Shown piece after piece: positions 21,576-45,434 of a DNA stretch of 64,000 nt. Below the pieces are notes generated by a model that saw only the letters and a program-made list of their open reading frames with translations, was not told the DNA's origin and did not search any database. Position 1 is the stretch's first letter; every line of letters starts with the position of its first letter. The stretch is from positions 1 to 64,000 of the IMG/VR virus record IMGVR_UViG_3300008261_000001, one strand, 5' to 3'. The position numbers and the translations under genes are program-made.

Positions 21576-21941
21576 ATGAGAACAGCAAGCGAAGTTGTAA
21601 GAAGCCTTGAGCAGAGGATTGCTCGCCTTGAAAGACAATCCAGTATCTTGGGTAAGACCTGTGTGATTGAGAAAATGTATAGGGGAGGCAGAGAAGGTGA
21701 GAGGGGTGAAGCCGTTCTTAATTGTAATGGAGTTAAGCTGTCCATAAAGTTCGACCTTTATGGTTATTCGACGGTGATTGGAAATGACCAACACTTGGAA
21801 AGTACAGGGGCGTTGGGACTCTTAGACAATCTTAAGATGGAGTATGGTGTGCCTAAAATCAAAGAGTTCATCGCTAAATGTATTGCGATAGCAGGTAGAG
21901 AAGGTATGACTCTTGACGAGTGTATCAAAATCGCCCGATAA
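21576..21941 (+). CDS. Hypothetical protein with RTASEV..LE.RIARLE leader
   Basis: N-terminal about 20 aa shared with the next gene; remainder unrelated. Confidence 0.8.
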   Translation: MRTASEVVRSLEQRIARLERQSSILGKTCVIEKMYRGGREGERGEAVLNCNGVKLSIKFDLYGYSTVIGNDQHLESTGALGLLDNLKMEYGVPKIKEFIAKCIAIAGREGMTLDECIKIAR

Positions 21942-21961
21942 ACAGATGCCTTGTTTATTTA

Positions 21962-22017
21962 TACTCCGAGATGGGGGATAGGTTTTAACCCTTAACCCAA
22001 CCCCTATCTCGGAGTAA
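21962..22017 (+). other. Long hairpin upstream of gene (copy 2)
   Basis: TACTCCGAGATGGGGG...CCCCTATCTCGGAGTA, about 16-bp stem; loop nearly identical to copy 1. Confidence 0.8.
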
Positions 22018-22021
22018 TGAC

Positions 22022-22627
22022 ATGAGAAGAACAGCAAGCGAAGTTTTACAGGAGCTTGAGACAAGAGTTGCCCGCCTTGAGAGGAAGGCTTGGAACCCCT
22101 TCAAGAAAAAAGAGGCACCCGTTGCCCCCGTGGAAGAGAAAGGGGCGTGGTCTACAAGCTATCCAGCTTTGGATTTGGGCTACAAAGGTCACACAAAAGA
22201 GGTGGTTCAGATGGGTCTTAATAACCTTGTCTATTCGGGCGATGAGGAAACCGTTGGGGATGTGGTTAAAATACACCTGCGTGATATGCACGGAACCACC
22301 TATGTGGAGGGAGCCTCAGCAGGGGACTACTATCGAAGGAATCTTAATGTGGATATAAAGAAAGTATCCGTAAGGTCTGTTTGGCTAGAAGAAAAGTCTA
22401 GCCGAAAGATAGATCTAGCTGTAGTGTTAGATGTGGTTTACGGTGATGTTTCACACCGAATGATGGATGGCGACACCTGGACGGATAGTCATGGGGGTAA
22501 GGGTACATTAGTGTCCTCCATAGGTGGTGTGATCTATATGTTCGAGGGACACGAATCGGATGACATTGCGATCAAGTATCTGCAAAAAAAGGAAGGCAAT
22601 AAGTACTTCAAGCTCTGGGGTAAGTGA
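22022..22627 (+). CDS. Hypothetical protein with RTASEV..LE.RVARLE leader
   Basis: As for 21576..21941. Confidence 0.8.
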   Translation: MRRTASEVLQELETRVARLERKAWNPFKKKEAPVAPVEEKGAWSTSYPALDLGYKGHTKEVVQMGLNNLVYSGDEETVGDVVKIHLRDMHGTTYVEGASAGDYYRRNLNVDIKKVSVRSVWLEEKSSRKIDLAVVLDVVYGDVSHRMMDGDTWTDSHGGKGTLVSSIGGVIYMFEGHESDDIAIKYLQKKEGNKYFKLWGK

Positions 22628-23362
22628 TTAGAGTCCTAGTTCTTTCTTGATCGCCTTATAAGCCACAACATCAGCTAGGGTGGGGATAACTCCGTCTCTT
22701 GCCTTTAGACCGAGGTCTTTTATTGTGTCCATAGCTTCCTCGTCACCCATTCTGCGGGCGAGGACATACATCTGACGCAGTTCATCTACAGGTAAAGGGC
22801 GAGTCAAGATGGGGTCTACACGCTTAGACCTTGAGGTGGCTTTTTGAGCGTCTAGTAAGTACTGCTCTTGTCCATCCCATAAAACACCACCTTCCTCTAG
22901 GGTGTTTCTCATCTCGACCATACGAGGGTTGCTACCTCCTGCTGGGATAGAGTCAATAACGGCTAACCACTTAGCTTTATAGCCCGCTCGGTCAGCTATC
23001 TTTTCGTAAAATCCTGGATTCTTGTTATACACGCCTATCCAATGCCCTACGCCCTCTTTCCAAGTCTTCCTCCAGTTTGTGGTGCGTTGGAAGTGCTTGC
23101 GGTCTCTATCCTTTGTGTTCAAGTTCGATCCGTCCACAAGGCTAACGAGATTTAGGTTCATGCTCGCTTGCCCATGACCCATGCTCGTACCTGTGGACTT
23201 CTGTGTCGAACTCAGCTTTACACCCACATTATCGGATAGCTGAATATAGTACACGCCAGCAGTACCGACCGCCTTCTTCCATCTAGAGAAGTTAGTGTCT
23301 AGCCAATCCTCTAGGTCTTGTACAGATATGTCCACATAGCTCATGGAGTAAAGGTTCCTCAT
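22628..23362 (-). CDS. Hypothetical protein, 244 aa
   Basis: Long ORF with AAGGGAG RBS, convergent with the previous gene. Confidence 0.8.
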   Translation of the reverse strand: MRNLYSMSYVDISVQDLEDWLDTNFSRWKKAVGTAGVYYIQLSDNVGVKLSSTQKSTGTSMGHGQASMNLNLVSLVDGSNLNTKDRDRKHFQRTTNWRKTWKEGVGHWIGVYNKNPGFYEKIADRAGYKAKWLAVIDSIPAGGSNPRMVEMRNTLEEGGVLWDGQEQYLLDAQKATSRSKRVDPILTRPLPVDELRQMYVLARRMGDEEAMDTIKDLGLKARDGVIPTLADVVAYKAIKKELGL

Positions 23363-23418
23363 TTGCGTCTCCCTTAAGGTTAGTCGCCTTAAGGAAGGAC
23401 ATAAAAGACTTATTGTTG

Positions 23419-23631
23419 TTACTTATCCGAGACTTTGTATGAGGCGATTACCTTGTCTTGGTCTTCGTCATACACATCTATTTGGTTATAGTTAGGCTCA
23501 AGAGAGCCGAAAAGAAAACCACTGCGAGTGACGAGTTCTATTTCACCGTCCAAGTACACATCACACTTGCGTTGTAGCTCCATCAAGCCCTTTAAGAACT
23601 GATTAAGGTTTTCTTTCATCTCTGCGTTCAT
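23419..23631 (-). CDS. Small hypothetical protein
   Basis: Start moved to ATG 23631 (MNAEMKENL). Confidence 0.6.
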   Translation of the reverse strand: MNAEMKENLNQFLKGLMELQRKCDVYLDGEIELVTRSGFLFGSLEPNYNQIDVYDEDQDKVIASYKVSDK

Positions 23632-23645
23632 CTGTCTTCTCTTGG

Positions 23646-23966
23646 TTATGTGGGGTGGTTGTTTTCGTACCAAAGCCTACGAGCTTCGGTTAGAACATCT
23701 TCCATCGAGTCGAGCAAATACTCGACATCGTAAGTGATGTGTACATTACCATAATCAAGTCGAAAAGAAGTTTCCTTGAAATGGATAGACCCTTGCTCAC
23801 CGAGGAGCAAGAAGGAGAGTTGGTTTATCTGAGGGTTGTAATCAACCTCCATTTCGGTTAAAAACTCCTCCCAGTATGTTTGGATTTCATCCGAGTTCTG
23901 GGCGTAGACCAAAAGGTCAACATCGACATGGGTCTCCGCCCCTATCTTATGAGTGAACACCCTCAA
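23646..23966 (-). CDS. Small hypothetical protein, possibly a distant family A member
   Basis: GAAGGAGG RBS; ends EARRLW. Confidence 0.65.
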   Translation of the reverse strand: MRVFTHKIGAETHVDVDLLVYAQNSDEIQTYWEEFLTEMEVDYNPQINQLSFLLLGEQGSIHFKETSFRLDYGNVHITYDVEYLLDSMEDVLTEARRLWYENNHPT

Positions 23967-24186
23967 CCTCCTTCAGCATAAGAGTGAGGTAGATTTTCCC
24001 CAAGTCCTGATCGAGGAACACAACCTGCCAGTCCTCTACCTTAGAGGCGATCTCAAGGCATAACTCATCACCCTTAATGACCCACACCATGTCAGTGGGC
24101 AGAAAATCCGATGAATATGTGTCATAGTCATAAGGGTCGGGCTTGCCACCACCCAAGAACTTACTGAAAACTGAAAGGTGAACCAT
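23947..24186 (-). CDS. Small hypothetical protein
   Basis: AGGAGG before ATG 24186; directly downstream of a promoter cassette. Confidence 0.7.
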   Translation of the reverse strand: MVHLSVFSKFLGGGKPDPYDYDTYSSDFLPTDMVWVIKGDELCLEIASKVEDWQVVFLDQDLGKIYLTLMLKEVEGVHS

Positions 24187-24223
24187 CTGAGCCTCCTGTG
24201 CTGTGTTTGGTTTCCACCCCCCT

Positions 24224-24252
24224 CTAATAAGAGCGACCCACACTTGGGATAA
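24224..24252 (-). promoter_or_regulatory. Promoter-like cassette TTATCC-N17-TATTAG
   Basis: Conserved boxes with 17-nt spacer; points into ORF 24186. Confidence 0.75.
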
Positions 24253-24394
24253 TAATAAATGAATAAAATAGATCTGTGTTTACTGATGGGGAGCTTTTAC
24301 ACGCTCCTATTAACAAATGGAAACCCAAACAAGACACCTGTGTTTCTTGCTGTGACAAGTACCTTGTTTTTCTTCACTTGGTTGTTCGGTGAGC

Positions 24395-28000: not shown

Positions 28001-31000
28001 CTAGCGGTTCGTCAGACTCTTTAGTGCAAATAGATCAGGCTTCGGATAAACCGAGCTTTCCATTTTAGCCAAAGTCCCTTGAGTCCGATGTGTCCTCGTT
28101 TTAATCCAAGCCATTCGTGACTCCCTCGCCTGTAAAACACCCAACCCATCATCCAAGTCACTCGGCAAACCTGAGCCCAACTCCCCATAACCCTCCGTTA
28201 TTAAAACAGAGTCCTCTATCACAACACGCCTGTCCAAGACACTTAAACAGGTGTTTGTGTTCACAAAAGGCTTTGAGCTTGTTAAGCCCTTAATGTTGTC
28301 CAACAACAACTCATTAGACGGATGTGTAGGATCCCCCTCACCCACAAGGCTCATGTAATCGTCTGCCTCATAGTCTGCCCAACTGACCATGTCCGTAGGA
28401 AACGACATAAACCTACGCACACGCTCAGACCAAGATAGTGTCCTCTCCCGATAAAATAAGAAGTCTTCAGCTACGCTCTGCACCAACCCATTTTTCATCC
28501 GAACTATCCGATACGAGAAGGGATGTACGCTATCGGTAGTCGTCGAATAAGTGCCTCCCTCCACCCCTGAGGTCACCCTTAAGGGATTTCCTAAATCTCC
28601 ACCAACACTAGGCAAGAGGTTGTAGGTGGACTTATCCTTAGTCCCTACACTACCGCTTACTATGAGGTAATCAAGTCCAACCTCTAGAACACGATACGAA
28701 CCTCTGTTGTCGTCCAACTCATGTGGCTCACCCTCTATGTACCCAACCTCACCTAGCTTGCCCTGATCCCCACGCGGTGGATACCCATACTCTACAGGTG
28801 AACTATCCAATAACGCCCCTTGTGGATCTATCACAAGGTAATCACCCACAAGGACACCAAGATCTAAGAAGTCTGCATTGGTATCCACGAGCTTACCCTC
28901 TAGAGGAACGGATATGCCCTCTTGTGCAGGAGACTCGTAAAGCACCTCAAACCCCTGTGAGAAGTACTCATCAAACGACTGCAACTGAGGAATAAGCCCA
29001 CCCACCCTTGTCTTAATCCTAAAGCTGTAAGCCTCCGCGATAGATGAACCCCTTACCCAACTACAAGTCAACTCCCCATCCACAACCCCCACAACCCTCA
29101 AGTACAACGCCTCTGTTCCGTCCTCCTTGTGGATAAACACATGGTCTCCCATCTGCACCACATTAGAGAAGTTTCCAATTTGGGTATCCGTCCCATCGGT
29201 GTCTTCTTCAATCAGATAGTTCACTTGCTTGGGAGTTAGGACATACACGCCCTCGCCCTCGTCTGTAAGATTTAACACCAAGCCCTCTCTCCCCTCATAA
29301 ACATAACGCAAAGAGGAGACACCCTCAACCACACCCTTTAGGACATCGGTGAACCTACGAGGTCTCCTAGCCACCAACTGCACCCTCTCTGTGAAATCCC
29401 ATGCGGGTAAATCCGATAGGGTGTAATCTATGGGGCTTCTTACATTACTACTGCCGTCTCCAAATACACTCTTGGTTGAATAGTCTCTCACCAACAGCGG
29501 AAAAGACTTATCCAAGTATATTCCACCTAAGACCGTCACGCTCATGGATAATACATCTAGGGGCAATAAGAACCCCTCCCCATAAGAGTTAACATCGGTG
29601 ACTTCACCTAAAGAACCCCACTCTATTCCGTAAACGACTCCGTCTGTACCCCTAAGAGCCGTAAGAGATGACGAGGTATCCCCTCCACCAGCTACACCAA
29701 GTGTAAACTGAATACTTCCACTTAAAGTACAAGGAGCTTCGCTAGGCACAAGGGAGGTCTTAACAAGGTCGAACTTAGCCCTTGTCCCACCTGTAATCAC
29801 TTGCCCATACGCCTCACCCAATATGTCGCTCAGTTCACTGAAGTCCACGACCGTCCCATCTAAATACGCCACGGAGCCATCTACAAAACTAAAGCTCGTC
29901 TCTGTCCTTGAGGCATAAGATATCCGTAGGGCTGATCGACCATAGACGGAGTCGTACACACCCAAAGTCGTAGACATGGGTCTAGATGAAACCCCCACTG
30001 AGTCTAAAATAACAATCAAGTCCCCAACAGAACCAAAGAAAGAGGACAACTCGGTGTTGTCTGTACTCAGTGTGGCTGAGATACCCAATACGCTTAAACC
30101 TGTCACCTTAGGGAATGAAATAACAACAGACTGACTCTGTGTCACAATCTCTCTAATCTCTTCGTCTGCGACACCCTCCGTGTAAAACTCCACTCGGTGA
30201 AGTCCAGAGTTATGCCCAGAGCTAACAACTAAGAAATCTCCCTTCAGAATATTATCCGCAGGTAAAGAGAGATTATGGATAACACCAGATAGGTTATCCG
30301 TAGAGCCCCCACTCAACACCAAGCCCATGTCCCCCTCACCGACATAGATAACACCTTGTTCGTTGACCTCCGACCCTACCATAATGGATAAACCGACCCC
30401 ACTCAAAGCAACCGAGTTTTCACCGCTTGAGCGATATCCGTAGATTAATAACCCATCGGATAAGATTTCTTTAATCTCAAAGGCTGAACCCCCATTTATG
30501 ACGGACGAGTTATTCACATCGGAAGATACGATGTGAGTACCACCCCCACCACCTACGGACTCATAAACAAGAAAACCGCTGTCCAAAACCTCAACCGAGG
30601 ACGAGTAGCTACCTTGTACCTCATAAGAGTCAAATAATGGATAACTCTCCCTAATAGAGACACGATCCGATGGGATATAAGCCGATGGGGATTGGGCTGT
30701 ATAGCCCAAGTGGAAATCCATAAACCAAGCCGAACCCACACCTGTGTAGATGGTCGTACCGCTTGTGGTGGTTAAGCCACCCAAGCCCCCCCAAAATGAG
30801 GAAGCTCTGAATAACCAAGTCTCACCCGTAAAGGCAGGAGCAGGTGGGACATTGGGATTATCTATGGGTGAGTCCACGATGGTGAGCGTGTTGCCCACAT
30901 AGGTGAAGGAAGTCATGTTGTCTGGTGAGTACGCCACATAACCAAAGCCAAACCTTTGGAAACTCACCGTCCAATCTGTCACGCCCCTTGTAAAAGTAAA

Positions 31001-34000
31001 CCGACCATATCGGATTAACCCTCCGTTCAAGTACACATCTAGCCGTATCTCGTTACCTGTGCTACCCTCGCCCGCAAGGTAGTCGAAATAAAGGAAATAA
31101 TCTCTGTACTTGGTGTTGGAAAACACGAGTTCTACAGTCGATACATCGTACTTGCCAGAGCTAGGGATACCCTCGCTCAAGGTCTCCGTTACGCTCACAC
31201 CGACCGCGTCATCGGATAAGTGATAAACGAGAGCGTTATTGACTCTGTAAGAGAGAGAACCACCCGAGTTCGAGGCGGAGAACCTCGGTGGCATGATTTC
31301 AGTTCCGTTTATCCAACCCAACTCCAGAAGCCTGTCCTCGAACACCATGAGGTCTGATTGTCTAGGTGTTTGTACACACTCACCAATCGCTGTGGCTACA
31401 GAGTAGTCATATGTTGTGACAAGGACACCATCCACGCCCTCTACGCCATCGTCCCTAACCTCATCTGGATAAACATATTCAAGGCTCCCATTGTTGTCTG
31501 CTTGTGCTGTAAGTCTCTCTAAATAGGGAGGAACCGTGACGAGAATATCCTTTTCTGTTAAGGGCTTCTTAAAGGGTATAGACTCGTCTCCGTCGTCGTT
31601 TACACCCAATCCCATGAGTGCTGGATACACATAAGGTTCCAAGCTAGTGTTTCCAAAAGTAACCGACCCCTCAAGAGCCGTGTGTGCCGAGGGGACATTT
31701 TGACCTAAGATTTCTTTAATAGGATAGTTAGGGTCAGACCCACTTGGCAAGGTTATGTCGAATATCTCACCCTCTGCCGACCTTAGTCCCACATCGACAC
31801 CCACACGATAAACACTGCTGTCTCCTTCTTCGTCCAAATCGAGGGCAAAGCTCTGAACAATCGTGTCTCCCCTCTTGGGGGCAAAAGCTGAACCAAAGGC
31901 TGTTATTAAGCTACCCTCCAAGACCACCACACACCCATTTACGATTTCTTTAATCCTCGCGTTCCGAGGTTCTCCAGTTAATGAAAACACAGAGTCATAG
32001 GCATACTCCCCCTCGTTCAATACGGGAGAGAAGCCAACACCATCAACACCCAACTGTAGCTTATCCCCCACACGCAACCCATTAAATACCCTTTCTAAAT
32101 TCCCCACCACCACATCGGATAAATCCCCACCCTCAGATAAGAACCTATCTGTTATTGGATAACCAGTAAGTGGGTCTATGGGAAACTCACTCAGTGGGAC
32201 AGCGGATAAGATGAGGCTAGGTCTTCCTACAGAGCTAGGAGCATATTCACTAAACCCATTAGGCGAATACGACACAACTCTGAACCTTGCTCCCCTCTTA
32301 GAGAGAGTTAAGCTGGATATGTTTTTTAATGAACCGAAAGCTGGGTTTTCTACGAGTGCTATGACATCCGTAAAAGTGCTCTCAAAGTCCCTAAAAAAGA
32401 ACAACTCCCCACCGCCTCGATAAGTCATCATCTTAGCCGACTGCGGATACAGCCTCGACTCTACACTCGGTTTCCACAAGGGCGAATAAATGGGAGCGTA
32501 CTCATACTTAATGAATGGATAACCCACACCCATGTCATAAGACATACGCTTTTCATAAGAAACCAAAGCGTAGTCGTCTATCTCGTTCTCTATGAGATTC
32601 CTCTGTGTAGATTTCTTCTTCTTAAAGTCCAAGACGCTCGATACACCCTCTGCATCTATCAAGTATCTTGGATAAATCTCCCTTGTGATGGGGTCTTCTA
32701 ATCCCGCACCACACCACTTGTCTCCCCTCAAAAGCTCGAACTTAAACAACCCATCCGCATCACCCACGACCTTGCCCGTTGTACTTGAGACAAGCTCGTC
32801 CACTGGCTTAATAAAACCATCGTATCTCTTTATCCAATTTCTAGCCACCACATCAGAGGCGAGAAGATCAAAATATCCAATAGACCTCCCTCGCTGAGTG
32901 TTTTCTGTCCGAGTTATCTTCGCCCCAAATCCCCTCTTGTCACTCACCTTGAGACTATCCAATAACTCTCTCTCTACCTCGCCTTCATAGGTTTGTTCAG
33001 CGACTGTTCTGAAGTAAAACACATCTGGGGCATACACCATGCACTTAGCGTAAATCTTCTTGCCCGTGTGCTCAGTCGGAACTCTCCTTTCCGTAAAACT
33101 TAACTCGTACTTCGGATACTCCACCTCGCCTGTGGCTAAAACCCTCTCACTGACCACCCCTTGTGCCGTATGCTTTAAGTAATAACTCTCACCCACAGAT
33201 ACGCCCAAACCACCCAACAAGTTTAACACATCCGAACTCAGAGCGTAGTCAACCCCCTCTACAAGCTCATAACCCAAACCCTCCGACTCCACATAACGGA
33301 TAAGAGTATAGCCCTTATCCGTTAAAACCTTGCTCGATAAAGCTAAAGATTTATCCCCCACTTTAAGCACAGCCCTCATCGACACCAATAACTCACTCAC
33401 ATTGTGTTCTGCCGTTTGCCCCCTCACTCCTAAAATAGTCACCCCATTAATCAAAGACACCGAAAGTACCTCGTAAGCAATACCTGCCAACATCAATAAA
33501 CCACCCACCTTAAATAAATCCCTCAAGTCACCCTCTACAGAAATCTCCCCACCACCCAAACGGCTCTTACAAACAACCCCACTTACGCTCTTGAAAACAT
33601 AACCAGATGCCCTCAAGACACTCACATCACTCGACTTTATCCCATACCTCGCAGGAGGATACACGGATAAGTTTCCATTAGAACCGACCGCAGTCACCCT
33701 AAAGATATGTCCAGATAGATTTAACAAATCATCTACAGCCACTAAACCACTCGGTATCCAACTCGAAATCGTACTGCTACCAATACTTATCTCTAAGTCC
33801 TCAACCTCTTTTATTCCAGTAGATACCCTAACCGAATACTCCCCACCCATAGACCTCGTCACATAATAACTAACACGCACATCCCCCACCGCGTTCACAT
33901 AAATAATCCTGTCACTCGTTATGCTCGCACCAGATGTGACAATAGATGCCCCGTCATACAAAGTAAATAAATCACTATCCAAGACCACCCCTCGCTCCAA

Positions 34001-36697
34001 CCCCCCATAACTGTAAACTCCGCTCTCCAATAAAACCGCACTCTCCTCCCTAACTAAAAATAAAACACCCTCCAAGACACGCTCGCTCTCCGTAAAAGGA
34101 ATATAAGACACCTCAACACCCACACCAGACTCTAAAGGAGACTCAAAAGATATAGCACCAGTGCTAACCTCATATCTCACACGCCCCCTGTCCAATAACT
34201 CCATCAACTCTAAAGCAACACCCTCACCAAATGGACTCGATAAGTCGTCCAATGACGCACTCACCTCCGCCCTGTCCGTTAAAACATCTCTCGGAACCCC
34301 CTTGTAATAACACACACCCACCCAACTGCTATCCAATACCCCATCGCTCTCAAAATATATCCGTCCACTCACCGAGTCCCTCGTAAAACCATAACCATCT
34401 ACAATAACACCCTCCTCATAGGTGACACCATCAACCTCTAATCTGTAATAACCATCTCGCCTCTGAATATCCGATATGTAAAAATCACCCAATAACTCCC
34501 TCTTTAAAATCACTAAGGGATAATAAACCGAACCCCCAACCTCCCTCAAATATAAACTAGATGTAGGATGCACATTGGATAAATCCATACCCCAATTGCG
34601 AATAATGTACACCTCACAACTACGCCTCTCACTGTAAAGCCTCTCCCAACACTCCCCCAACACTAAATCAGAACCACCCACACCCCCACCCTCATGCTCC
34701 TCCCATATGTTAGAGGATTCATCTATCCTATCCATACTCGATAAAACCCCATCCCCTGAGATAACACGCCTCCATAAAACCACCCCAGATGTTATCTGCC
34801 TAACAAAGTTCCCCTCCGCCTTATCCAAATCCTCTAAACGACCACTACCCACCACATTAAGCCAACCCCTCAGAAATCTTAAACGCCCCCCCAACCCATA
34901 CAAAACATCAAAATCTACACCCTCACTCAAAACCTCACCACCTATAGACAAACCACCCACCAACGACAAAACTCCACCACTCGTCTCTAAACCATCCAAT
35001 ACCCCACGCACATAACCACTACGAGAAACAACACCCAACCATGTAATCGAGTTATCCATATCCAAACCATACTCAATGTCCTCCCCCTTCGTTAAATAAC
35101 CACCACCCTCCACCCTAAAGTGCCTGCTACCCGTTGCGTCCGCCCCACCCCTAAATAAAGACACCTCACCCAAACCACTCAGCAGACTTAAAGATAAACC
35201 CCCACCACCGACCACACCCACCTCCTCGTCATCATAACTTACATAACCACCCACACTAAGTGAACCCACACTTAAAAAGACACCACCCGCCCAACGCTCA
35301 TGTGGCACTAAACCCAACTTATCCAAATCCCCAGACACAGACTCCCCTAAGACCCTTATGTGTCCATAACGATCCACATCCACTAAACCCTCCCCCCCTA
35401 CAAGATCCCCCCCTACCCACGACACCAAATCCCCATCAACTAAAATACTCCCACTGCCCGATAAAGGCTTGCTCGATACCATACCCAAACCCACCCTGTC
35501 CATACCCACTAACCCCGTGCCGTACTTGGCCCCCGTTAAATCCACTCGCCCCCCTGTGTACACCCTCCCAAAGTCCCCTGAGCCCAACGATACATACGCC
35601 ACACCCACCTTACGCTTCTTAAACTCAGGTACATCCTCTACATACTCACACAATAAAACATCCCCACTCAATAACCTCACATACGAACCCAATAAATAAC
35701 CCCTAAAGAAACCACGCCTCACCCCCTCACCCAATCCGTCCTTCTCCCACTCCCAACCACTCACCCCAAATGAACCCTCCCCTATTACCCCACTTTCCAA
35801 CTCACTCTCCGACTCCATAAACACACGATCACTACATAACGCTAACCCCTCATACACCAACTCGTAATCCCCCGACCAATACACACGCCCAGCCTCCCTA
35901 TCAAACTCAAAATCAGTCAAGAAATCCCCCACACCACCCACTCGCCTCAATAATGGAAACTCATTCAAACGAGGACAAGGAGATAAATAATCTCCTGACC
36001 TTAACGCACTACCGCCCACTAAAGATCCCCTGATTAAGATTATCCCCAAACCCCTGTCCTCGTCACTCAACGAACCCCACCTTAACTCACTACCCTCACT
36101 ATCCATTAACCCATATGAAGAAGATAAATCACCACCCCCAACAAGAATGTCCTCACCCACTGTTAGCCTCTTCGAACCCACCACCAACTCGTCACCTAAC
36201 CTCAAACCCACTAACCCCCCATCACCCACTACACCAAATGACTCCCCACGACCCCCACCCAATAACTTCCATGTCGAACCCTCCCACTTAAAACGCTCCC
36301 TCACACCATCGTTTGCCGTCCACCAATAACTCACCCCCTCCAAATATACCAACCCATCCGGCTCACCCCCCTCTGATTCTGCTACTCCTAAACCACTATC
36401 CAATACCTCTAAACTCTCCCCCCCACGAGTCGCTGATCTTATCCTATTCCCACCAAGCTCCACACCCCCATACCAAATACCACCCCCTACAGATACCCAA
36501 CTGATCTCCCTCGATACATCACCCACTGCACCATCCCCCGCAGATATCCATAAGACTTCCCCCTCCCCCCTTATAGCCTCATAGTCATAACCCAATAAAT
36601 CCACCCCTCCCCTCACAATACGACTGCCCAAACCCGTCAGCGTGTTGTTCCCATCCCCAGACCTTACATCTAGCCTCAGTAATGTTAATGTACTCAT
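28001..36697 (-). CDS. Giant protein (2898 aa), probable baseplate/tail-associated structural protein
   Basis: Uninterrupted 8.7-kb ORF; recurring L.EG(V/E)D(Y/F/I) motifs; function inferred. Confidence 0.75.
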   Translation of the reverse strand: MSTLTLLRLDVRSGDGNNTLTGLGSRIVRGGVDLLGYDYEAIRGEGEVLWISAGDGAVGDVSREISWVSVGGGIWYGGVELGGNRIRSATRGGESLEVLDSGLGVAESEGGEPDGLVYLEGVSYWWTANDGVRERFKWEGSTWKLLGGGRGESFGVVGDGGLVGLRLGDELVVGSKRLTVGEDILVGGGDLSSSYGLMDSEGSELRWGSLSDEDRGLGIILIRGSLVGGSALRSGDYLSPCPRLNEFPLLRRVGGVGDFLTDFEFDREAGRVYWSGDYELVYEGLALCSDRVFMESESELESGVIGEGSFGVSGWEWEKDGLGEGVRRGFFRGYLLGSYVRLLSGDVLLCEYVEDVPEFKKRKVGVAYVSLGSGDFGRVYTGGRVDLTGAKYGTGLVGMDRVGLGMVSSKPLSGSGSILVDGDLVSWVGGDLVGGEGLVDVDRYGHIRVLGESVSGDLDKLGLVPHERWAGGVFLSVGSLSVGGYVSYDDEEVGVVGGGGLSLSLLSGLGEVSLFRGGADATGSRHFRVEGGGYLTKGEDIEYGLDMDNSITWLGVVSRSGYVRGVLDGLETSGGVLSLVGGLSIGGEVLSEGVDFDVLYGLGGRLRFLRGWLNVVGSGRLEDLDKAEGNFVRQITSGVVLWRRVISGDGVLSSMDRIDESSNIWEEHEGGGVGGSDLVLGECWERLYSERRSCEVYIIRNWGMDLSNVHPTSSLYLREVGGSVYYPLVILKRELLGDFYISDIQRRDGYYRLEVDGVTYEEGVIVDGYGFTRDSVSGRIYFESDGVLDSSWVGVCYYKGVPRDVLTDRAEVSASLDDLSSPFGEGVALELMELLDRGRVRYEVSTGAISFESPLESGVGVEVSYIPFTESERVLEGVLFLVREESAVLLESGVYSYGGLERGVVLDSDLFTLYDGASIVTSGASITSDRIIYVNAVGDVRVSYYVTRSMGGEYSVRVSTGIKEVEDLEISIGSSTISSWIPSGLVAVDDLLNLSGHIFRVTAVGSNGNLSVYPPARYGIKSSDVSVLRASGYVFKSVSGVVCKSRLGGGEISVEGDLRDLFKVGGLLMLAGIAYEVLSVSLINGVTILGVRGQTAEHNVSELLVSMRAVLKVGDKSLALSSKVLTDKGYTLIRYVESEGLGYELVEGVDYALSSDVLNLLGGLGVSVGESYYLKHTAQGVVSERVLATGEVEYPKYELSFTERRVPTEHTGKKIYAKCMVYAPDVFYFRTVAEQTYEGEVERELLDSLKVSDKRGFGAKITRTENTQRGRSIGYFDLLASDVVARNWIKRYDGFIKPVDELVSSTTGKVVGDADGLFKFELLRGDKWCGAGLEDPITREIYPRYLIDAEGVSSVLDFKKKKSTQRNLIENEIDDYALVSYEKRMSYDMGVGYPFIKYEYAPIYSPLWKPSVESRLYPQSAKMMTYRGGGELFFFRDFESTFTDVIALVENPAFGSLKNISSLTLSKRGARFRVVSYSPNGFSEYAPSSVGRPSLILSAVPLSEFPIDPLTGYPITDRFLSEGGDLSDVVVGNLERVFNGLRVGDKLQLGVDGVGFSPVLNEGEYAYDSVFSLTGEPRNARIKEIVNGCVVVLEGSLITAFGSAFAPKRGDTIVQSFALDLDEEGDSSVYRVGVDVGLRSAEGEIFDITLPSGSDPNYPIKEILGQNVPSAHTALEGSVTFGNTSLEPYVYPALMGLGVNDDGDESIPFKKPLTEKDILVTVPPYLERLTAQADNNGSLEYVYPDEVRDDGVEGVDGVLVTTYDYSVATAIGECVQTPRQSDLMVFEDRLLELGWINGTEIMPPRFSASNSGGSLSYRVNNALVYHLSDDAVGVSVTETLSEGIPSSGKYDVSTVELVFSNTKYRDYFLYFDYLAGEGSTGNEIRLDVYLNGGLIRYGRFTFTRGVTDWTVSFQRFGFGYVAYSPDNMTSFTYVGNTLTIVDSPIDNPNVPPAPAFTGETWLFRASSFWGGLGGLTTTSGTTIYTGVGSAWFMDFHLGYTAQSPSAYIPSDRVSIRESYPLFDSYEVQGSYSSSVEVLDSGFLVYESVGGGGGTHIVSSDVNNSSVINGGSAFEIKEILSDGLLIYGYRSSGENSVALSGVGLSIMVGSEVNEQGVIYVGEGDMGLVLSGGSTDNLSGVIHNLSLPADNILKGDFLVVSSGHNSGLHRVEFYTEGVADEEIREIVTQSQSVVISFPKVTGLSVLGISATLSTDNTELSSFFGSVGDLIVILDSVGVSSRPMSTTLGVYDSVYGRSALRISYASRTETSFSFVDGSVAYLDGTVVDFSELSDILGEAYGQVITGGTRAKFDLVKTSLVPSEAPCTLSGSIQFTLGVAGGGDTSSSLTALRGTDGVVYGIEWGSLGEVTDVNSYGEGFLLPLDVLSMSVTVLGGIYLDKSFPLLVRDYSTKSVFGDGSSNVRSPIDYTLSDLPAWDFTERVQLVARRPRRFTDVLKGVVEGVSSLRYVYEGREGLVLNLTDEGEGVYVLTPKQVNYLIEEDTDGTDTQIGNFSNVVQMGDHVFIHKEDGTEALYLRVVGVVDGELTCSWVRGSSIAEAYSFRIKTRVGGLIPQLQSFDEYFSQGFEVLYESPAQEGISVPLEGKLVDTNADFLDLGVLVGDYLVIDPQGALLDSSPVEYGYPPRGDQGKLGEVGYIEGEPHELDDNRGSYRVLEVGLDYLIVSGSVGTKDKSTYNLLPSVGGDLGNPLRVTSGVEGGTYSTTTDSVHPFSYRIVRMKNGLVQSVAEDFLFYRERTLSWSERVRRFMSFPTDMVSWADYEADDYMSLVGEGDPTHPSNELLLDNIKGLTSSKPFVNTNTCLSVLDRRVVIEDSVLITEGYGELGSGLPSDLDDGLGVLQARESRMAWIKTRTHRTQGTLAKMESSVYPKPDLFALKSLTNR

Positions 36698-40654: not shown

Positions 40655-40669
40655 GTTTTTTAAAAACCC

Positions 40670-40698: not shown

Positions 40699-40743
40699 TA
40701 GGTGGACAGCTAGAGAGACCACCCACACACAAGGATATAGCCC

Positions 40744-40935: not shown

Positions 40936-40942
40936 TGGATAA

Positions 40943-42081: not shown

Positions 42082-42092
42082 GGTGTTGTCCT

Positions 42093-44321
42093 TCATTTAA
42101 CGAGTCCATTACGGATATTATAGGCGAAGAGGAAGTACTCAGGGTTCTTTTTAGCAAGGGAGGCGAGTGCTTCCCTGCTTTGGAACGCCTCCATCGTGAC
42201 GGTAACGATTTCGGAAGCAGTATCTCCAGGGTAGAGCTTACCAGCATAGTTGCTTGGTGGGTTCTTCATGTCCAAAGAGTACTCTCCCGACGCACTACAA
42301 GCTCTTACCGTCTTTTTTGGATCGTTGACTTGGTTGCAGTAGAAAGCAGTACCGTAGTGTCTAATCTCTGGGCAGTAGTACTCAAGAGAGTGCATAACTT
42401 CATGTATAGCGACATCTGTACCGCAGTCGTACCCTACTTGGAGGGTTGCACTTTGATTCCTGTAGTTGTTTCGTGCGTGTGCCCGTCCTCTTTGAAGAAC
42501 CCAAATGATTTTCTTCAAGTTGAAGGACGGATACTGCTTACAGATTTGAAGTGCGAATAAGCCTGCTGTAAGGAGCTTACTGATTTTAGAGCCCTCGTTA
42601 GATTCCCAGAGTTCTCTTGCCCTATCTGTCACTTGGGGTAGCCCCCCAAAGAAAGGGTTTCTGTAAGTGTCCTCTAGGTCTTGGTCAGACTTCACCAAGT
42701 GTAGATCCACACCTAGTTTTTTGTACTCCTCGAAGATGTCTAGAGGTATTGGAAAGTCGTCTAGGGACTGCCCATCTAAGAGGGCGAGGTGGGGGTTGTT
42801 TGAGGAGGGTTTGATGTATTCTAAGCTCTTTTTATCTAGCTTTCTTTTTTCTATGGCAACCCCCCACGGCTGAGAATTATAAAACTCTAGAACCTCATCT
42901 ATGCTTTGAGGGGGTGTAAAATCGCTGTTAAACCTAAACCCTCCCTCTTTTGAGGACTTATGGAAAAGTTCAACGAAGCCCACATCCTCCAATATCTCTA
43001 TGTAGGCATCCTTTTGTCCAGGGTTTCGGTGAATGAAACTGAAGAACTCTTCATACCAACCCACAATCGTGTCTCTAGGAGGTTGGTACGCGGGCAGTCT
43101 ACCAGGCTTGTTCGGGTGGTTTCTGATTTTAAGGATAAGATCCGCATACTCTTTTAGATGAGAGTCAAAGTCCACCAACTTAAAAAATGGGACTCTATGG
43201 ATTGAGTCTCCCACGATGTAGAAGTAGTTCGCTTGCTGAATGAGTCTCATCTTTGTGGCAGGTTCTAGCCCGTCAAGGATTACCTTTTCGGCTTCCGTGA
43301 TAGGAGCCTCAGTAGTTGACTTCCCATATAAAGGACTTCCAAAGCGTATATTGAAGGGTGCGGATTGTTGATCCACGAGTGGTTTTAGTTGAGAGAACGA
43401 TTTTCTACTCCTACCAAGTTGGGTTTTAAATATGTCGATGAGATAACCATACGCCTGATAGAGTTGTTCGTTGTCCGATTGGATAACGCTCTCTTCCGTC
43501 TTGGACTCAAGCAAAGGGACGAACTTACGATACGCCTCGTTCATGATTGCGTTGTACTTTCGAGTCGCTTCTTTCTTATCCATGCCCAACAACCTTCTGC
43601 GTAGGTGGTCGTGGGTCGAATCATAACCGAACCTCGCCCCATCCATGTCTTCTTCTTTGAGGATAAGCCCTTGATACACACGAGAGGACTCGTCCACCAA
43701 GTCGCTCGGATTAACCTCTTCTACGACCACCTCCTTATCCACATCTACGATAACGGGAGGGGGTACATCTAGGGGCAAGGCTTGGGCATAACCGCCCACC
43801 TCAAACATCTTCTTAATGAGCAAGTTCGTGAGGCGATCTTCACGAATCTTTAACTCAAGATCTATGTCTATTATCTCTTCCGCGTGTCCATCTCTCCAAG
43901 ATAGGATAAATAACGAGATGGGTGCAGGATTGGATAAGTAAGTGCCACCCTTTATGGAAAAATCGGTCTTCTGCATATCGGGCTTCAGCTTGAGAAGATC
44001 CTGTAGAAATCTATCCATTTTATTGGGACTGGACTCTATTGCTTTGACTTGACCACCGACCCAACCGAGAGCTTCCACCTCATAGAAGCCACCGACCTTT
44101 TTCCATCTAGGGTCATTGGTGGGTGCTTGTACGAAATAGAAGTCGTACTCTTTTCCAATCTTGGTGCTTTTGACCCTCCACTTCTCCCACGACAGAGACA
44201 TTTCTCTAGTGAGGAAGTTTTCCAATGTGCGGGGGTTGAACACCTTAAGGCGTTTTCTACCTGCTTCTAGGAGGCGGGCGATCATGGCTTTCTTAGCGTA
44301 GGTGTGGTGCTTGTAGTTCAT
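42093..44321 (-). CDS. 742-aa protein with C-terminal zincin-like HExxH domain
   Basis: AIHEVMHSLEY...YAGKLY...SEIVTVTME. Confidence 0.65.
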   Translation of the reverse strand: MNYKHHTYAKKAMIARLLEAGRKRLKVFNPRTLENFLTREMSLSWEKWRVKSTKIGKEYDFYFVQAPTNDPRWKKVGGFYEVEALGWVGGQVKAIESSPNKMDRFLQDLLKLKPDMQKTDFSIKGGTYLSNPAPISLFILSWRDGHAEEIIDIDLELKIREDRLTNLLIKKMFEVGGYAQALPLDVPPPVIVDVDKEVVVEEVNPSDLVDESSRVYQGLILKEEDMDGARFGYDSTHDHLRRRLLGMDKKEATRKYNAIMNEAYRKFVPLLESKTEESVIQSDNEQLYQAYGYLIDIFKTQLGRSRKSFSQLKPLVDQQSAPFNIRFGSPLYGKSTTEAPITEAEKVILDGLEPATKMRLIQQANYFYIVGDSIHRVPFFKLVDFDSHLKEYADLILKIRNHPNKPGRLPAYQPPRDTIVGWYEEFFSFIHRNPGQKDAYIEILEDVGFVELFHKSSKEGGFRFNSDFTPPQSIDEVLEFYNSQPWGVAIEKRKLDKKSLEYIKPSSNNPHLALLDGQSLDDFPIPLDIFEEYKKLGVDLHLVKSDQDLEDTYRNPFFGGLPQVTDRARELWESNEGSKISKLLTAGLFALQICKQYPSFNLKKIIWVLQRGRAHARNNYRNQSATLQVGYDCGTDVAIHEVMHSLEYYCPEIRHYGTAFYCNQVNDPKKTVRACSASGEYSLDMKNPPSNYAGKLYPGDTASEIVTVTMEAFQSREALASLAKKNPEYFLFAYNIRNGLVK

Positions 44322-44324
44322 GGC

Positions 44325-44645
44325 TTATTTCCTGCTGAGGTAGAGGTTGAGGTTATCCTCAAGGACTTCTTTGAGTTCGCTTGCACTCGCTCTCACCTTG
44401 AGGGGTAACCCCTTTTGAGTTTCGGTGAAGGTGAGGACAAAGGCACCGCCTGCCCACTTAATCTCGACCTCGTTGGGGTATCCATTATTGATTGGAAAGT
44501 AGAGCTTGACGCTGTTGGTGGACTTTTCGACTCGCTTTAGCCCTGTGGTTTGAGTGACTTGTTTAAGCCCCCCCAACAAGGAAAAGACGCTGTCCATGTA
44601 GCCCCCACCGCTCGCCACTTTATTCCATAGTCGTGCGTTATCCAT
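44325..44645 (-). CDS. Small hypothetical protein
   Basis: GAGGAG RBS; coupled to the next gene. Confidence 0.7.
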   Translation of the reverse strand: MDNARLWNKVASGGGYMDSVFSLLGGLKQVTQTTGLKRVEKSTNSVKLYFPINNGYPNEVEIKWAGGAFVLTFTETQKGLPLKVRASASELKEVLEDNLNLYLSRK

Positions 44646-44752
44646 TTTAGAGTACTCCTCGTTTGTATGAGCAAGTACGGGGCACTATAAAAGCAATACA
44701 AGATGTCTAGAGTAAAAACCAAGAGCTTGTTCGTATAGCCACCAACTTGAGA

Positions 44753-44998
44753 CTAATGAGAAATAATCTGATAGCCCCGTGTTAAGTCGATTACTTTAGG
44801 CATATTGGATAACTTGGTCTTTGACTCTACCCACAAGCTGAAGAGGGTGTTCACTCGGTCTTTTAGATACTCTTTGTAGGGGGAGGGGCATCCCTCATCT
44901 TCAAGACACTCTATGTACTTCTTGGTGAGAGTATCCAATAACCGCTCGTGAGCTTGTAGATCTATCTCTAATAGCTCTATCCGAGTGAACTTATCCAT
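44753..44998 (-). CDS. Small hypothetical protein
   Basis: Co-oriented ORF. Confidence 0.6.
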   Translation of the reverse strand: MDKFTRIELLEIDLQAHERLLDTLTKKYIECLEDEGCPSPYKEYLKDRVNTLFSLWVESKTKLSNMPKVIDLTRGYQIISH

Positions 44999-45005
44999 TT
45001 AGGGA

Positions 45006-45434
45006 TTACCGCCTACGAGCTTCGAGACGAGCGATGCGGGTTTCGAGACTTCTGAGTACATCAGAGGCTGATCTTCTGCTACCCATACCGTGGGTGTTAT
45101 AGAGGCTACGCTCGTGTTCCGCATCGGATGCCCCTTCTGCCCAATCTTGATAAGAGCTAATGCTCTCGTTTAGCTCTGAGATGGCACTTGCGGATAAGGG
45201 GCTCATAGCGAGTATGTCTAATGCCTCACTGAAGTCCCCTGAGGTGAGGGCTTCGTTGAGGGACTCTAAACCACGCTGTCCAAAGACAGACCTTCTTTGT
45301 GTGGGGGACATCTCAAGCCAAATACCATGTAGTGTTGAGAAACACGCTTTCGCCTCTGCCGTGGGGCGACCACTCACCGCCGCATGGTTTAACGCTGAAC
45401 AACCAAGATAGTCTCTAGATGATAATCTTCTCAT
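45006..45434 (-). CDS. Hypothetical protein with C-terminal RSASDVLRSLETRIARLE motif
   Basis: GGAG before ATG 45434 (MRRLSS); motif shared with the N-termini of 21576 and 22022. Confidence 0.75.
   Translation of the reverse strand: MRRLSSRDYLGCSALNHAAVSGRPTAEAKACFSTLHGIWLEMSPTQRRSVFGQRGLESLNEALTSGDFSEALDILAMSPLSASAISELNESISSYQDWAEGASDAEHERSLYNTHGMGSRRSASDVLRSLETRIARLEARRR

What the first reader, a model, noticed from the sequence alone, without database searches (positions are those of the whole stretch)
21576..45080. Portable peptide R(T/S)AS(E/D)VxxxLExR(I/V)ARLE at either terminus of unrelated proteins
Seen: MRTASEVVRSLEQRIARLERQ (21576), MRRTASEVLQELETRVARLERK (22022) and, at the very C-terminus, RRSASDVLRSLETRIARLEARRR (45006..45434). 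The third copy uses different codons, so conservation is at protein level. Weaker echoes: MRRLSS (21134, 45434), NKVASG (44645), LKTASK (window end), MIARLLEA (44321). Established: T4 internal proteins carry a short N-terminal capsid-targeting sequence removed by the prohead protease. Inference: an amphipathic helical tag for head packaging/ejection or docking on a common scaffold; working at either end would be unusual.
Basis: partly seen in the sequence, partly recalled or inferred. Interest (0 to 1): 0.72.

Follow-up and report, generated by a model that had tools for sequence, protein, structure and literature searches.

The report
Portable head-targeting tag of huge phages
A 20-residue helical peptide is attached, mostly at the start but sometimes at the end, of 17 otherwise unrelated small proteins of a 290-kb freshwater phage, and it most likely serves as a removable address label that loads them into the virus head.

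Summary
The peptide (M)R(T/S)AS(E/D)VLRSLExR(I/V)ARLE occurs on 17 ORFs of this 290,179-bp phage: three in the window, 15 straight after the start Met, one C-terminal, one internal or alternative-start. Five related genomes or fragments hold 55 copies, including a second, independent C-terminal copy. Bodies are unrelated. Synonymous sites are near saturation (dN/dS 0.18), so selection acts on the peptide.

Two tagged paralogues lie between the portal and head-protease genes, and two more follow the capsid gene. The tag usually ends in [RK]-x-A-[S/N]. This motif is about 2.3-fold enriched proteome-wide. The excess sits in the scaffold-like protein, the head maturation protease and a 791-aa protein, in all four genomes.

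One tagged protein belongs to a widespread 98-aa family whose other members lack the tag. There the tag and linker end in KRAN/KRAS exactly where tagless homologues begin.

Best reading (about 0.5): a cleavable prohead-targeting sequence analogous to the T4 CTS, with a different sequence and protease motif. Packaging, cleavage and the docking partner are inferred, not shown. No virion proteome exists, and the complex prediction gave no answer.

The parts
21576..21638 (+). Tag copy 1, N-terminal: MRTASEVVRSLEQRIARLERQ
   Evidence: HMM E 3e-14
21576..21941 (+). Tagged gene 1 (121 aa). The body has no Pfam or PHROG match.
21510..21567 (+). Upstream cassette of gene 1: TTTATA box (21510-21515) followed by a 5'UTR hairpin (21518-21565). 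The 3' arm of the hairpin carries the Shine-Dalgarno GGAG.
   Evidence: MFE -28.8 kcal/mol, z -7.7
22022..22087 (+). Tag copy 2, N-terminal: MRRTASEVLQELETRVARLERK
   Evidence: HMM E 2.8e-14
22022..22627 (+). Tagged gene 2 (201 aa). The body has no Pfam or PHROG match.
21958..22016 (+). Upstream cassette of gene 2: TTTATA box (21958-21963) followed by a hairpin (21962-22016) that contains the SD.
   Evidence: MFE -33.9 kcal/mol, z -6.6
45009..45077 (-). Tag copy 3, C-terminal: RRSASDVLRSLETRIARLEARRR followed by the stop codon. The RSAS motif lies between the body and the helix.
45006..45434 (-). Gene carrying the C-terminal tag. It is 142 aa from the ATG at 45434, which has a GGAG 7 nt upstream and a TTTATA at -60. 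Longer alternative starts exist at 45479 and 45497.
21134..23362 (.). Variable segment holding tagged genes 1 and 2 and two other ORFs. It is absent at this position in relatives G004 and G005, whose flanking genes are 52-90% identical.
44610..44621 (-). KVAS at residues 9-12 of the 106-aa ORF 44325..44645.

Best explanation
**What the module is.** The peptide is a portable address module with three parts:
- a T/S-x-x-E helix cap (RTASE);
- a two-heptad amphipathic helix (VLRSLExRIARLE);
- a junction, [RK]-x-A-[S/N].

**Proposed mechanism.** The helix docks the tagged protein onto an internal component of the assembling prohead. The best candidate is the leucine-zipper-like segment of the acidic scaffold protein encoded next to the protease. 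The inner face of the capsid protein is the alternative.

The head maturation protease then cuts at the junction motif. That frees the cargo inside the head, from where it would enter the next host together with the DNA.

The motif lies on both sides of the helix in this phage. The same module can therefore be severed from a body on either side, which would explain N-terminal, C-terminal and internal use.

**Shown:**
- copy number and selection at the protein level;
- portability between unrelated bodies and between ends of the protein;
- add-on status relative to tagless homologues;
- the junction motif and its concentration in scaffold and protease;
- synteny with the head module;
- a predicted helix-plus-flexible-linker architecture.

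**Inferred:** docking, cleavage, encapsidation and ejection.
For: **Copies and selection.**
- There are 17 copies in the genome and 55 in five related genomes or fragments.
- Bodies are unrelated except for one pair.
- dN/dS is 0.18 with pS 0.61.

**Synteny.** The gene order is portal 148055 (phrog_16240, 6e-35), tagged 149811, tagged 150466, 125-aa ORF, 1062-aa ORF, protease 154859 (phrog_18299, 5.5e-17; hhalign 6e-49 to the Tunturi_5 head maturation protease), acidic scaffold-like 156273, 201-aa ORF, capsid protein 158531 (phrog_2522, 2.7e-51), tagged 159599, tagged 160297.

**The [RK].AS motif.**
- It is enriched 2.1-2.5-fold in the untagged proteomes of four genomes (z 7.3-9.5). Permuted control motifs are not enriched.
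- The excess sits in the same orthologous families in all four genomes: scaffold-like protein 7-9 sites, 791-aa protein 8-10 sites, protease 3-6 sites in three of the four genomes.
- The protease site R25-V-A-S, or a close variant, is kept in all 24 orthologues. A second site follows the catalytic domain.
- Scaffold sites are positionally conserved. One lies just before the invariant C-terminal peptide ELSKLWESAPDVSKFF.
- 17 of 52 N-terminal tags have a strict [RK].AS within 16 residues after the helix, against a background of 1.6%. Most of the others have E[RK]x[AS].

**Add-on status.** In the phrog_9437 family, tagless members start at M..IAxTILQQLGG. Tagged members carry tag plus linker ending KTAN, KRAN, KRAS or RVAS exactly at that point.

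**Structure.** The AF2 model of the tagged 129-aa protein has pLDDT 90. Residues 4-25 form a helix, residues 21-30 average only pLDDT 59, and a compact body follows.

**Turnover and promoter class.**
- Tagged genes are fast-turnover accessory genes, like the T-even internal-protein genes (PMC9026906).
- They share the TTTATA promoter-like box with the first genes of the tail and head modules.

**Possible partner.** The scaffold zipper LAEEIAMLKxANxRL is present in all genomes that carry this tag. It is absent from LR745208 and G009, which lack the tag.
Against: - There is no virion proteome, no N-terminal sequencing and no cultured member. The cultured relatives phage G and Tunturi_5 lack the tag.
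- The complex prediction of capsid protein + scaffold + tag gave 'no answer', so no partner is supported.
- Only a third of the tags have the strict junction motif. The window copies end in RQSS and RKAW.
- Most tagged genes are far from the head module. In the window one pair lies beside the baseplate genes, and seven lie at 212-230 kb.
- The protease assignment rests on PHROG and hhalign matches to annotated proteins. Pfam and PDB sequence searches were silent, and the AF2 model was too poor to use.
- T4- and phiKZ-type prohead proteases cleave after Glu (PMC5694885). A cut at [RK]-x-A-[S/N] would be a different specificity and is unproven.
- Strict positional conservation of the sites is only modestly above controls: 25% against 16-19%, and one control reached 33%.
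- The timing of the TTTATA promoter class is unknown, and a helicase gene carries the box too.
- The zipper/tag co-occurrence rests on a single phylogenetic split.
Confidence: 0.5

Rival explanations
1. The helix is a common docking peptide for a hub that is not the prohead. The hub could be another virion part such as the baseplate or tail, a replication or assembly compartment, or a host protein. In this reading [RK]-x-A-[S/N] is an unrelated feature of linkers.
For: - The window pair lies directly after the baseplate/tail module.
- Most tagged genes are scattered away from the head module.
- No partner was supported.
- Conservation of non-core helix positions argues only for some specific partner, not for which one.
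Against: - Four tagged genes flank the head module, and that arrangement is kept in relatives.
- The junction motif is concentrated in the scaffold and the head protease.
- In LR745208 the other tag type also sits inside the head module.
Confidence: 0.2
2. The helix is a generic short coiled coil. It only makes each protein dimerise or trimerise, or lets the tagged proteins associate with one another, without addressing them anywhere.
For: - The heptad pattern is a/d = L7, L10, I14, L17, with e = Glu and g = Arg. This is compatible with parallel homomers.
- Weak Pfam and Atlas look-alikes are generic coiled coils.
Against: - Near identity at surface positions across 17 unrelated bodies, and across lineages with saturated synonymous sites, is not needed for self-association.
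- Two heptads make a weak zipper.
- This reading does not explain the terminal position, the junction motif or the head-module synteny.
Confidence: 0.12
3. [RK]-x-A-S is a modification site (R-x-x-S resembles basophilic kinase sites) and the tag is a regulatory or degron-like element rather than an address.
For: - There are several tandem RxxS motifs after some tags, for example RTAS..RTAS..RSAS..RKVSS in the 149811 gene.
- The motif is enriched across the proteome.
Against: - No Pkinase-family gene was found in the genome, and the control genomes did ring.
- The junction accepts Asn in place of Ser (KRAN, KTAN), which a kinase site would not.
- The motif is concentrated in the scaffold and the protease.
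Confidence: 0.05
4. The conservation is at the nucleic-acid level. A duplicated expression cassette (promoter, hairpin, SD, first codons) is what is conserved, and the peptide is a by-product.
For: - The TTTATA box and SD-containing hairpin are shared upstream of most N-terminal copies. Some upstream regions are nearly identical.
- The first three codons after ATG hardly vary.
Against: - Synonymous sites in the tag are near saturation while the residues are kept (pS 0.61, pN 0.20).
- C-terminal and internal copies lack the cassette.
- G008 (GC 31%) keeps the peptide core with different DNA and a different upstream sequence.
Confidence: 0.03

Closest known systems
T4 capsid-targeting sequence (CTS) of internal proteins IPI/IPII/IPIII and Alt (Mullaney & Black 1996; reviewed in PMC9026906 and PMC5694885)
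   Same: - It is a short terminal peptide shared by otherwise unrelated, fast-evolving small proteins.
- The proteins are encoded partly within the portal/protease/scaffold/capsid gene block.
- The peptide ends at a motif that also marks the scaffold and the protease itself.
- It can be transferred between bodies.
   Different: - There is no evident sequence likeness.
- It is longer (about 20-30 against 10-19 residues) and is a clear two-heptad helix.
- The inferred cleavage motif is [RK]-x-A-[S/N], not L/I-x-E.
- It is also used at the C-terminus and internally.
- There are 17 carriers (about 5% of genes) against about 4 in T4.
- The phage belongs to a different lineage, with a small HK97-type capsid protein related to that of phage G.
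- Nothing has been tested experimentally.
N-terminal propeptides of head and ejection proteins of phiKZ-like giant phages (SPN3US gp53/gp54, gp47; PMC5694885, PMC10052503)
   Same: Diverged proteins carry conserved N-termini. They are processed by the prohead protease at a short motif, the protease processes itself, and a role in prohead targeting is inferred.
   Different: - Those propeptides are mostly longer than 100 residues, sit on paralogues, and are cut after Glu (A-x-E or S-x-E).
- Here the tag is short and sits on unrelated bodies, including a family that elsewhere lacks it.
Encapsulin cargo-loading peptides and bacterial-microcompartment encapsulation peptides (from my own knowledge)
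   Same: These are short peptides, joined by a flexible linker to either terminus of unrelated cargo proteins, that dock cargo inside a protein shell. Those of microcompartments are amphipathic helices of about 18 residues. For encapsulins the shell has the HK97 fold.
   Different: - Those peptides are not removed by a protease.
- They serve cellular compartments, not a virion.
- The genome has no such shell genes other than the phage capsid protein.
- Binding to the capsid protein was not supported or excluded.
PeSL-type mobile regulatory cassettes of T4-type phages (Arbiol et al. 2010; from my own knowledge)
   Same: Repeated promoter-plus-stem-loop units flank fast-turnover ORFan genes in variable regions.
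   Different: Here the repeated unit extends into the coding region as a peptide that is under selection, and the stem-loop lies between the promoter box and the start codon.

Membership tests
T4-type capsid-targeting sequence | A short terminal peptide shared by otherwise unrelated proteins of one phage | tested here: met
   There are 17 carriers. Only one pair of bodies is homologous.
T4-type capsid-targeting sequence | The peptide is delimited by the cleavage motif of the prohead protease, which also marks the scaffold and the protease itself | tested here: inconclusive
   The [RK]-x-A-[S/N] junction is enriched after tags, in the scaffold-like protein and in the protease. Cleavage itself has not been observed, and the motif is not the Glu-type motif of gp21.
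T4-type capsid-targeting sequence | Carriers are found inside virions in processed form and are ejected | not testable with these tools
   No cultured tag-bearing phage and no proteome exist. Phage G and Tunturi_5 lack the tag.
T4-type capsid-targeting sequence | The peptide is sufficient to load a foreign protein into the head | not testable with these tools
   There is only a natural hint. A widespread 98-aa family acquired the tag in this clade alone.
T4-type capsid-targeting sequence | Sequence relatedness to the T4 CTS | not tested
   No T4 sequence was fetched. The head protease and capsid protein belong to other PHROG families than those of T4.
Encapsulin or microcompartment cargo peptide | The peptide binds the shell protein directly and is not cleaved | tested here: inconclusive
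   The complex prediction with capsid protein and scaffold gave no answer. The capsid protein is 90% identical in LR745208, which lacks this tag. That argues weakly against the capsid protein as partner.
Generic coiled coil | A heptad a/d hydrophobic pattern with other positions free to vary | tested here: not met
   The a/d pattern is present. But E11, R13, A15 and E18 are 90% or more conserved across 25 diverse copies.
Paralogous protein family with a conserved N-terminal domain | The bodies descend from one ancestor together with the tag | tested here: not met
   - Bodies show no BLAST similarity.
- One body belongs to a family whose other members lack the tag.
- C-terminal and internal copies exist.

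The most novel reading that the evidence does not exclude
Phage-G-like huge phages of fresh water may use a modular, orientation-independent cargo-addressing code. It would have at least two alternative address peptides: the LExRIARLE zipper, and a helix-NP-helix peptide, TLRSKLIRLAHxNPxLRPQLLPLL. Each would be severed by a head protease with a previously undescribed [RK]-x-A-[S/N] specificity. With it, almost any small protein, including former cytoplasmic accessory proteins, could be converted into a pre-made injected effector. Which address a phage uses would co-vary with its scaffold protein.
Probability: 0.3. Interest if true: 0.85.

Novelty: new variant of a known kind. Interest (0 to 1): 0.72.

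Why it matters
If this is right, it extends the T4 capsid-targeting principle to an unrelated, uncultured lineage of huge phages that is widespread in fresh water.

It predicts a set of 8-17 injected proteins per phage. These are prime candidates for counter-defence or host-takeover factors, and they can be found by sequence alone.

It defines a new head-protease recognition motif that could be used to predict mature virion proteins.

It offers a compact tag of about 25 residues, usable at either end, for loading foreign proteins into large capsids.

It also gives a natural example of how a cytoplasmic phage protein family becomes virion cargo by gaining a leader peptide.

Tried and rejected
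- **DNA similarity.** Megablast of the region against the phage collection found no match.
- **Family searches on tagged proteins.** Pfam and PHROG searches of all 17 gave nothing except phrog_9437 for one body.
- **Word-index protein search with the tag region.** It found only the query and one near copy. The E-value threshold for a 5.8-billion-sequence library is too strict for 20 residues.
- **Complex prediction** of capsid protein + scaffold + tag: no answer. It is not used as evidence either way.
- **AF2 of the protease** with 12 sequences: pLDDT 52. It was unusable, so no fold search was run on it. Pfam and PDB sequence searches with the protease profile found nothing relevant.
- **Foldseek of the tagged 129-aa model against PDB:** no significant match, best E 0.22.
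- **791-aa motif-rich protein against the Tunturi_5 'DNA ejection protein':** no similarity.
- **Strict column-wise conservation of [RK].AS sites between orthologues:** only a modest excess over controls.
- **Charge and pI of the bodies:** no bias towards basic proteins as in the T4 internal proteins. The hydrophobic moment of the helix is not exceptional.
- **Metagenome and genome-collection scans with tag alignments:** The one accepted metagenome scan confirmed only 3 loci.
- **RNA runs:** none holds the region, so no transcript ends could be read.
- **ESM Atlas on the tag:** only sub-threshold, generic coiled-coil leads.
- **Rejected readings:** a cis-acting DNA or RNA element as the reason for the conservation (codon data), and a phage kinase site (no kinase gene; Asn is tolerated at the Ser position).
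Full report
**1. Observation**

- MRTASEVVRSLEQRIARLERQ opens ORF 21576..21941 (+).
- MRRTASEVLQELETRVARLERK opens ORF 22022..22627 (+).
- RRSASDVLRSLETRIARLEARRR closes the minus-strand ORF 45006..45434.

The window is the first 64 kb of a single 290,179-bp contig with 47% GC. It is an IMG/VR virus record estimated to be 93% complete. A six-frame regex scan, followed by an HMM built from the hits, finds 17 carriers in the genome. The independent search finds the same 17.
- Fifteen carry the peptide directly after the start Met.
- One carries it at the C-terminus; this is the window copy.
- One (159599..160261) carries it at residue 95 of a 220-aa ORF, or at the start if translation begins at 159875.

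De novo clustering of the first 35 residues of all predicted proteins makes this the largest N-terminal cluster, with 15 members. The next clusters have 4 and 3 members and are mostly ordinary paralogues.

**2. Portable, and selected as a peptide**

With the tag removed, only one pair of bodies (149811 and 150466) is homologous, at 38% identity. All other pairs have BLAST E above 0.01. None of the 17 has a Pfam match. One body matches phrog_9437, a family of unknown function.

Across 14 full copies the 19 tag codons have pS 0.61 and pN 0.20, giving dN/dS 0.18. Ser, Leu and Arg use up to six, four and four different codons at single positions. The C-terminal copy shares 28-42 of 57 nt but 13-16 of 19 residues with the others. 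Conservation is therefore at the protein level, and the copies are old.

**3. Surroundings in the window**

Both N-terminal window copies sit behind a repeated unit: a TTTATA box, then a strong hairpin whose 3' arm contains the GGAG Shine-Dalgarno sequence. The hairpins have MFE -28.8 and -33.9 kcal/mol and z -7.7 and -6.6.
- GGAGTAA precedes 14 of 355 predicted genes, and 9 of those are tagged.
- A TTTATA box at -90 to -25 precedes 51 genes. Thirteen of them carry the tag, counting three that the script did not flag. The others include the first gene of the tail module (6386), the gene 141525, and the portal gene.

The segment 21134-23362, which holds both window genes, is missing at this position in two relatives whose flanking genes are 52-90% identical.

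One of these relatives, G004, instead has tagged ORFans elsewhere.
- One is inserted between the orthologues of window genes 2820..3590 and 3642..5240.
- One is a shorter orthologue of 212036..212878 that keeps the tag.
- One is a truncated tag remnant.

Tagged genes are thus fast-turnover accessory genes.

**4. Head module**

PHROG searches identify the portal (148055..149740, 6e-35), a head maturation protease (154859..156244, 5.5e-17) and the major head protein (158531..159409, 2.7e-51). A profile of 12 protease orthologues matches the annotated head maturation protease of Tunturiibacter phage Tunturi_5 at E 6e-49.

The gene after the protease (156273..157757, 494 aa) is acidic, repetitive and partly coiled coil. 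Its C-terminal peptide ELSKLWESAPDVSKFF is invariant in 18 orthologues. It therefore looks like a scaffold protein.

The order is portal, tagged, tagged, 125-aa ORF, 1062-aa ORF, protease, scaffold-like, 201-aa ORF, capsid, tagged, tagged. From my own knowledge, T4 has 20-67-68-21-22-23, with the prohead-core proteins gp67 and gp68 where the two tagged paralogues sit here.

**5. A second motif**

Many tags are followed by (R/K)(T/V)AS.
- In the untagged proteins of this genome, [RK][TSV]AS occurs 36 times against 9.9 +/- 2.7 in per-protein shuffles.
- [RK].AS is enriched 2.1-2.5-fold in four genomes (z 7.3-9.5). The controls [RK].SA, [RK].GS, [DE].AS and SA.[RK] are not enriched.

The excess is concentrated in the same orthologous families in all four genomes:
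- the scaffold-like protein, with 7-9 sites against about 0.6 expected;
- a 791-aa protein (142123..144498), with 8-10 sites;
- the protease, with 3-6 sites in three of the four genomes;
- a 175-aa protein;
- the tagged proteins.

In 24 protease orthologues down to 46% identity, WD(K/R)(V/I)RVASG near residue 25 is kept almost unchanged. A [RK]xAS recurs just after the catalytic domain inside an otherwise unalignable linker. Scaffold sites are positionally conserved (LG[KR]xAS and the N-terminal RRA[NST]S), and one lies just before the invariant C-terminal peptide.

The cultured distant relatives show the same pattern:
- Tunturi_5: KVAS at 265 of 287 in the protease, four sites in the next gene, and five in a gene annotated as a DNA ejection protein.
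- Phage G: KVAS and KIAS near the C-terminus of gp19. A preprint annotates gp19 as the head maturation protease (bioRxiv 10.1101/2024.12.16.628780).

I infer that [RK]-x-A-[S/N] is the recognition motif of this protease family. The scissile bond is unknown.

Strict column-wise conservation of sites between orthologues is only modestly above controls: 25% against 16-19%, and one control reached 33%.

**6. Link between tag and motif**

Of 52 N-terminal tags, 17 have a strict [RK].AS within 16 residues after the helix, against 1.6% of random windows. Most of the others continue E-[RK]-x-[AS]. In the C-terminal window copy the motif (RSAS) lies between the body and the helix.

The clearest case is 160297..160686. 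Its body belongs to a family of about 98 residues with 91 cluster representatives in the protein library.
- Members outside this clade start M..IAxTILQQLGG.
- Members of this clade carry MRRSASEIIRNLEMRIARLE plus a linker of 3-25 residues. The linker ends KTAN, KRAN, KRAS or RVAS exactly where the tagless proteins begin.
- Some 200-aa members have an extra domain, then an internal tag, then the body.

AlphaFold2 with this alignment gives pLDDT 90. Residues 4-25 form a helix, residues 21-30 average only pLDDT 59, and a compact alpha/beta body follows. The body has no significant PDB fold match.

A tagless member sits among small unknown ORFs of a 196-kb contig, not in a head module.

**7. Relatives**

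Searching the viral collection with the protease gave 41 loci with 46-100% identity. Three near-complete genomes were fetched. An iterated HMM finds 55 tags:

| Genome | Copies | Typical form |
|---|---|---|
| G000 (this phage) | 17 | MRTASEVLRSLEARIARLE |
| G004 (fragment) | 4 | as G000 |
| G006 | 15 | MRHLTASQKIAQLESRIARLEK |
| G007 | 11 | MRRTASEILSDLEIRIARLE |
| G008 (GC 31%) | 8 (13 by de novo clustering) | MISQKLASLEARIAKLEQ |

- G006 has a second C-terminal copy on a non-homologous 83-aa protein, encoded right after the capsid gene.
- Across 25 diverse copies, L10 and R13 are invariant, and E11, A15, L17 and E18 are 90% or more conserved.
- Tagged genes lie next to the head module in several further relatives.
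- The capsid protein is 94-98% identical among these genomes, the protease 48-67%, and the scaffold about 50%.

The tag is absent from LR745208 (capsid protein 90% identical), G009, Tunturi_5 and phage G. The search method was validated on the window's own genome.

**8. A second tag type**

De novo clustering in LR745208 revealed another shared leader, M(T)TLRSKLIRLAHxNPxLRPQLLPLLKEA. It has 11 copies there, 8 in G009, 5 in G007 and 3 in this genome.

One carrier in this genome is a 103-aa protein (283647..283958) with a copy at each end. In LR745208 one carrier lies between the scaffold and decoration genes.

The scaffolds of LR745208 and G009 lack the segment LAEEIAMLKxANxRL, which all genomes with the LExRIARLE tag possess. 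This fits docking of the LExRIARLE tag on that scaffold segment. It is a single phylogenetic split, and so weak evidence.

**9. Mechanism and rivals**

The most economical reading is a cleavable prohead-targeting sequence. It is analogous to the T4 CTS, which is N-terminal, 10-19 residues long, shared by unrelated and poorly conserved internal proteins, targets them to the core, and is removed by gp21. Alt and perhaps gp21 itself are trimmed at both ends (PMC9026906, PMC5694885). I put this at about 0.5.

The rivals are:
- docking on a non-capsid hub (0.2);
- plain oligomerisation (0.12);
- a modification or degron element (0.05; no kinase gene; Asn replaces Ser at the junction);
- a nucleic-acid cassette artefact (0.03; contradicted by the codon data).

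The complex prediction gave no answer and is not counted either way.

**10. Comparison and novelty**

In function this would be a CTS. It is not a member of the T4 CTS family in any testable sense:
- the sequence is different;
- the protease motif is different (not after Glu);
- the phage lineage is different (capsid protein related to those of phage G, 39% identical, and Tunturi_5, 47% identical).

Use at either terminus and internally, the site-helix-site design, the number of carriers, the coexistence of two tag types, and the conversion of a widespread tagless family into a tagged one are not described in the papers I could search. I rate it a new variant of a known kind.

The phage is common in lakes. 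More than 20 freshwater DNA runs from 15 studies hold the region. No RNA run holds it and no cultured representative exists, so every step after 'the peptide exists and is selected' remains inference.

Noticed in passing
G000 198183-199253 (-) and 283647-283958 (+), outside the window; LR745208 (L152-L176), e.g. 398171-398575 (-); G009: There is a second, unrelated shared terminal peptide, M(T)TLRSKLIRLAHxNPxLRPQLLPLLKEA, of helix-NP-helix form. It has 11 copies in LR745208, 8 in G009, 5 in G007 and 3 in this genome. One carrier here is a 103-aa protein with a copy at each end. The peptide looks like an alternative address tag or a coat-binding helix-turn-helix.
   Followed up: partly
window 21510-21567 and 21958-22016; also upstream of most other tagged genes: A repeated 5' cassette consists of a TTTATA box followed at once by a strong hairpin (z -7.7 and -6.6). 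The 3' arm of the hairpin sequesters the GGAG ribosome-binding site, and the stems co-vary between copies. It may stabilise the mRNA or gate translation.
   Followed up: partly
G000 156273-157757 and 18 orthologues (alignment A5): The acidic scaffold-like protein has a hypervariable repetitive middle. Its C-terminal peptide ELSKLWESAPDVSKFF is invariant and is preceded by a [RK]xAS site. This is probably the capsid-binding end, released by the protease.
   Followed up: partly
G000 142123-144498: A 791-aa protein of unknown function near the portal gene carries 10 [RK].AS motifs against 0.7 expected. Its orthologues in three other genomes carry 8-10. It may be a polyprotein-like head or ejection protein that is cut into pieces of about 70 residues.
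   Followed up: partly
window 21134-23362: This segment, holding two tagged genes and two other ORFs, is absent at this position in relatives G004 and G005. Their baseplate genes on one side and small genes on the other are conserved.
   Followed up: yes
window 45499-46107 (-): An Fe/Mn superoxide dismutase gene (Pfam Sod_Fe_N and Sod_Fe_C) lies directly upstream of the gene with the C-terminal tag.
   Followed up: partly
window 28001-36697 (-): A 2898-aa ORF has no Pfam match and sits in a region of extreme GC skew (-0.51). It is conserved at 62% identity in relative G005.
   Followed up: no
window 42093-44321 (-): A 742-aa protein has an HEVMH (HExxH-like) motif near its C-terminus. Only a weak match to a PHROG of unknown function was found.
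   Followed up: no
window 20643-21092 (+): A gamma-glutamyl cyclotransferase-like gene (phrog_2520, 7.5e-29) follows the last baseplate-module gene, with an overlapping stop and start.
   Followed up: no
G008 149825-152353 (L139): Four neighbouring genes start MYSQRQRQSRLASLRxxRLASLRSKKAS. This is a leader made of tandem RLAS/KKAS motifs with no zipper helix.
   Followed up: no
window about 5240-5330 and 62270-62350: Short tandem direct repeats lie upstream of genes: CCTTGAGGGTGTTATTT x3 before the helicase gene at 5240, and GGGCATAAGGTGTATT x2 before 62353.
   Followed up: no
window 20600-23400: The region is held, at 46-99% of sampled words, by at least 20 freshwater, lake, drinking-water and ballast-water DNA runs from 15 studies. 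No RNA run holds it. The phage lineage is widespread in fresh water.
   Followed up: partly
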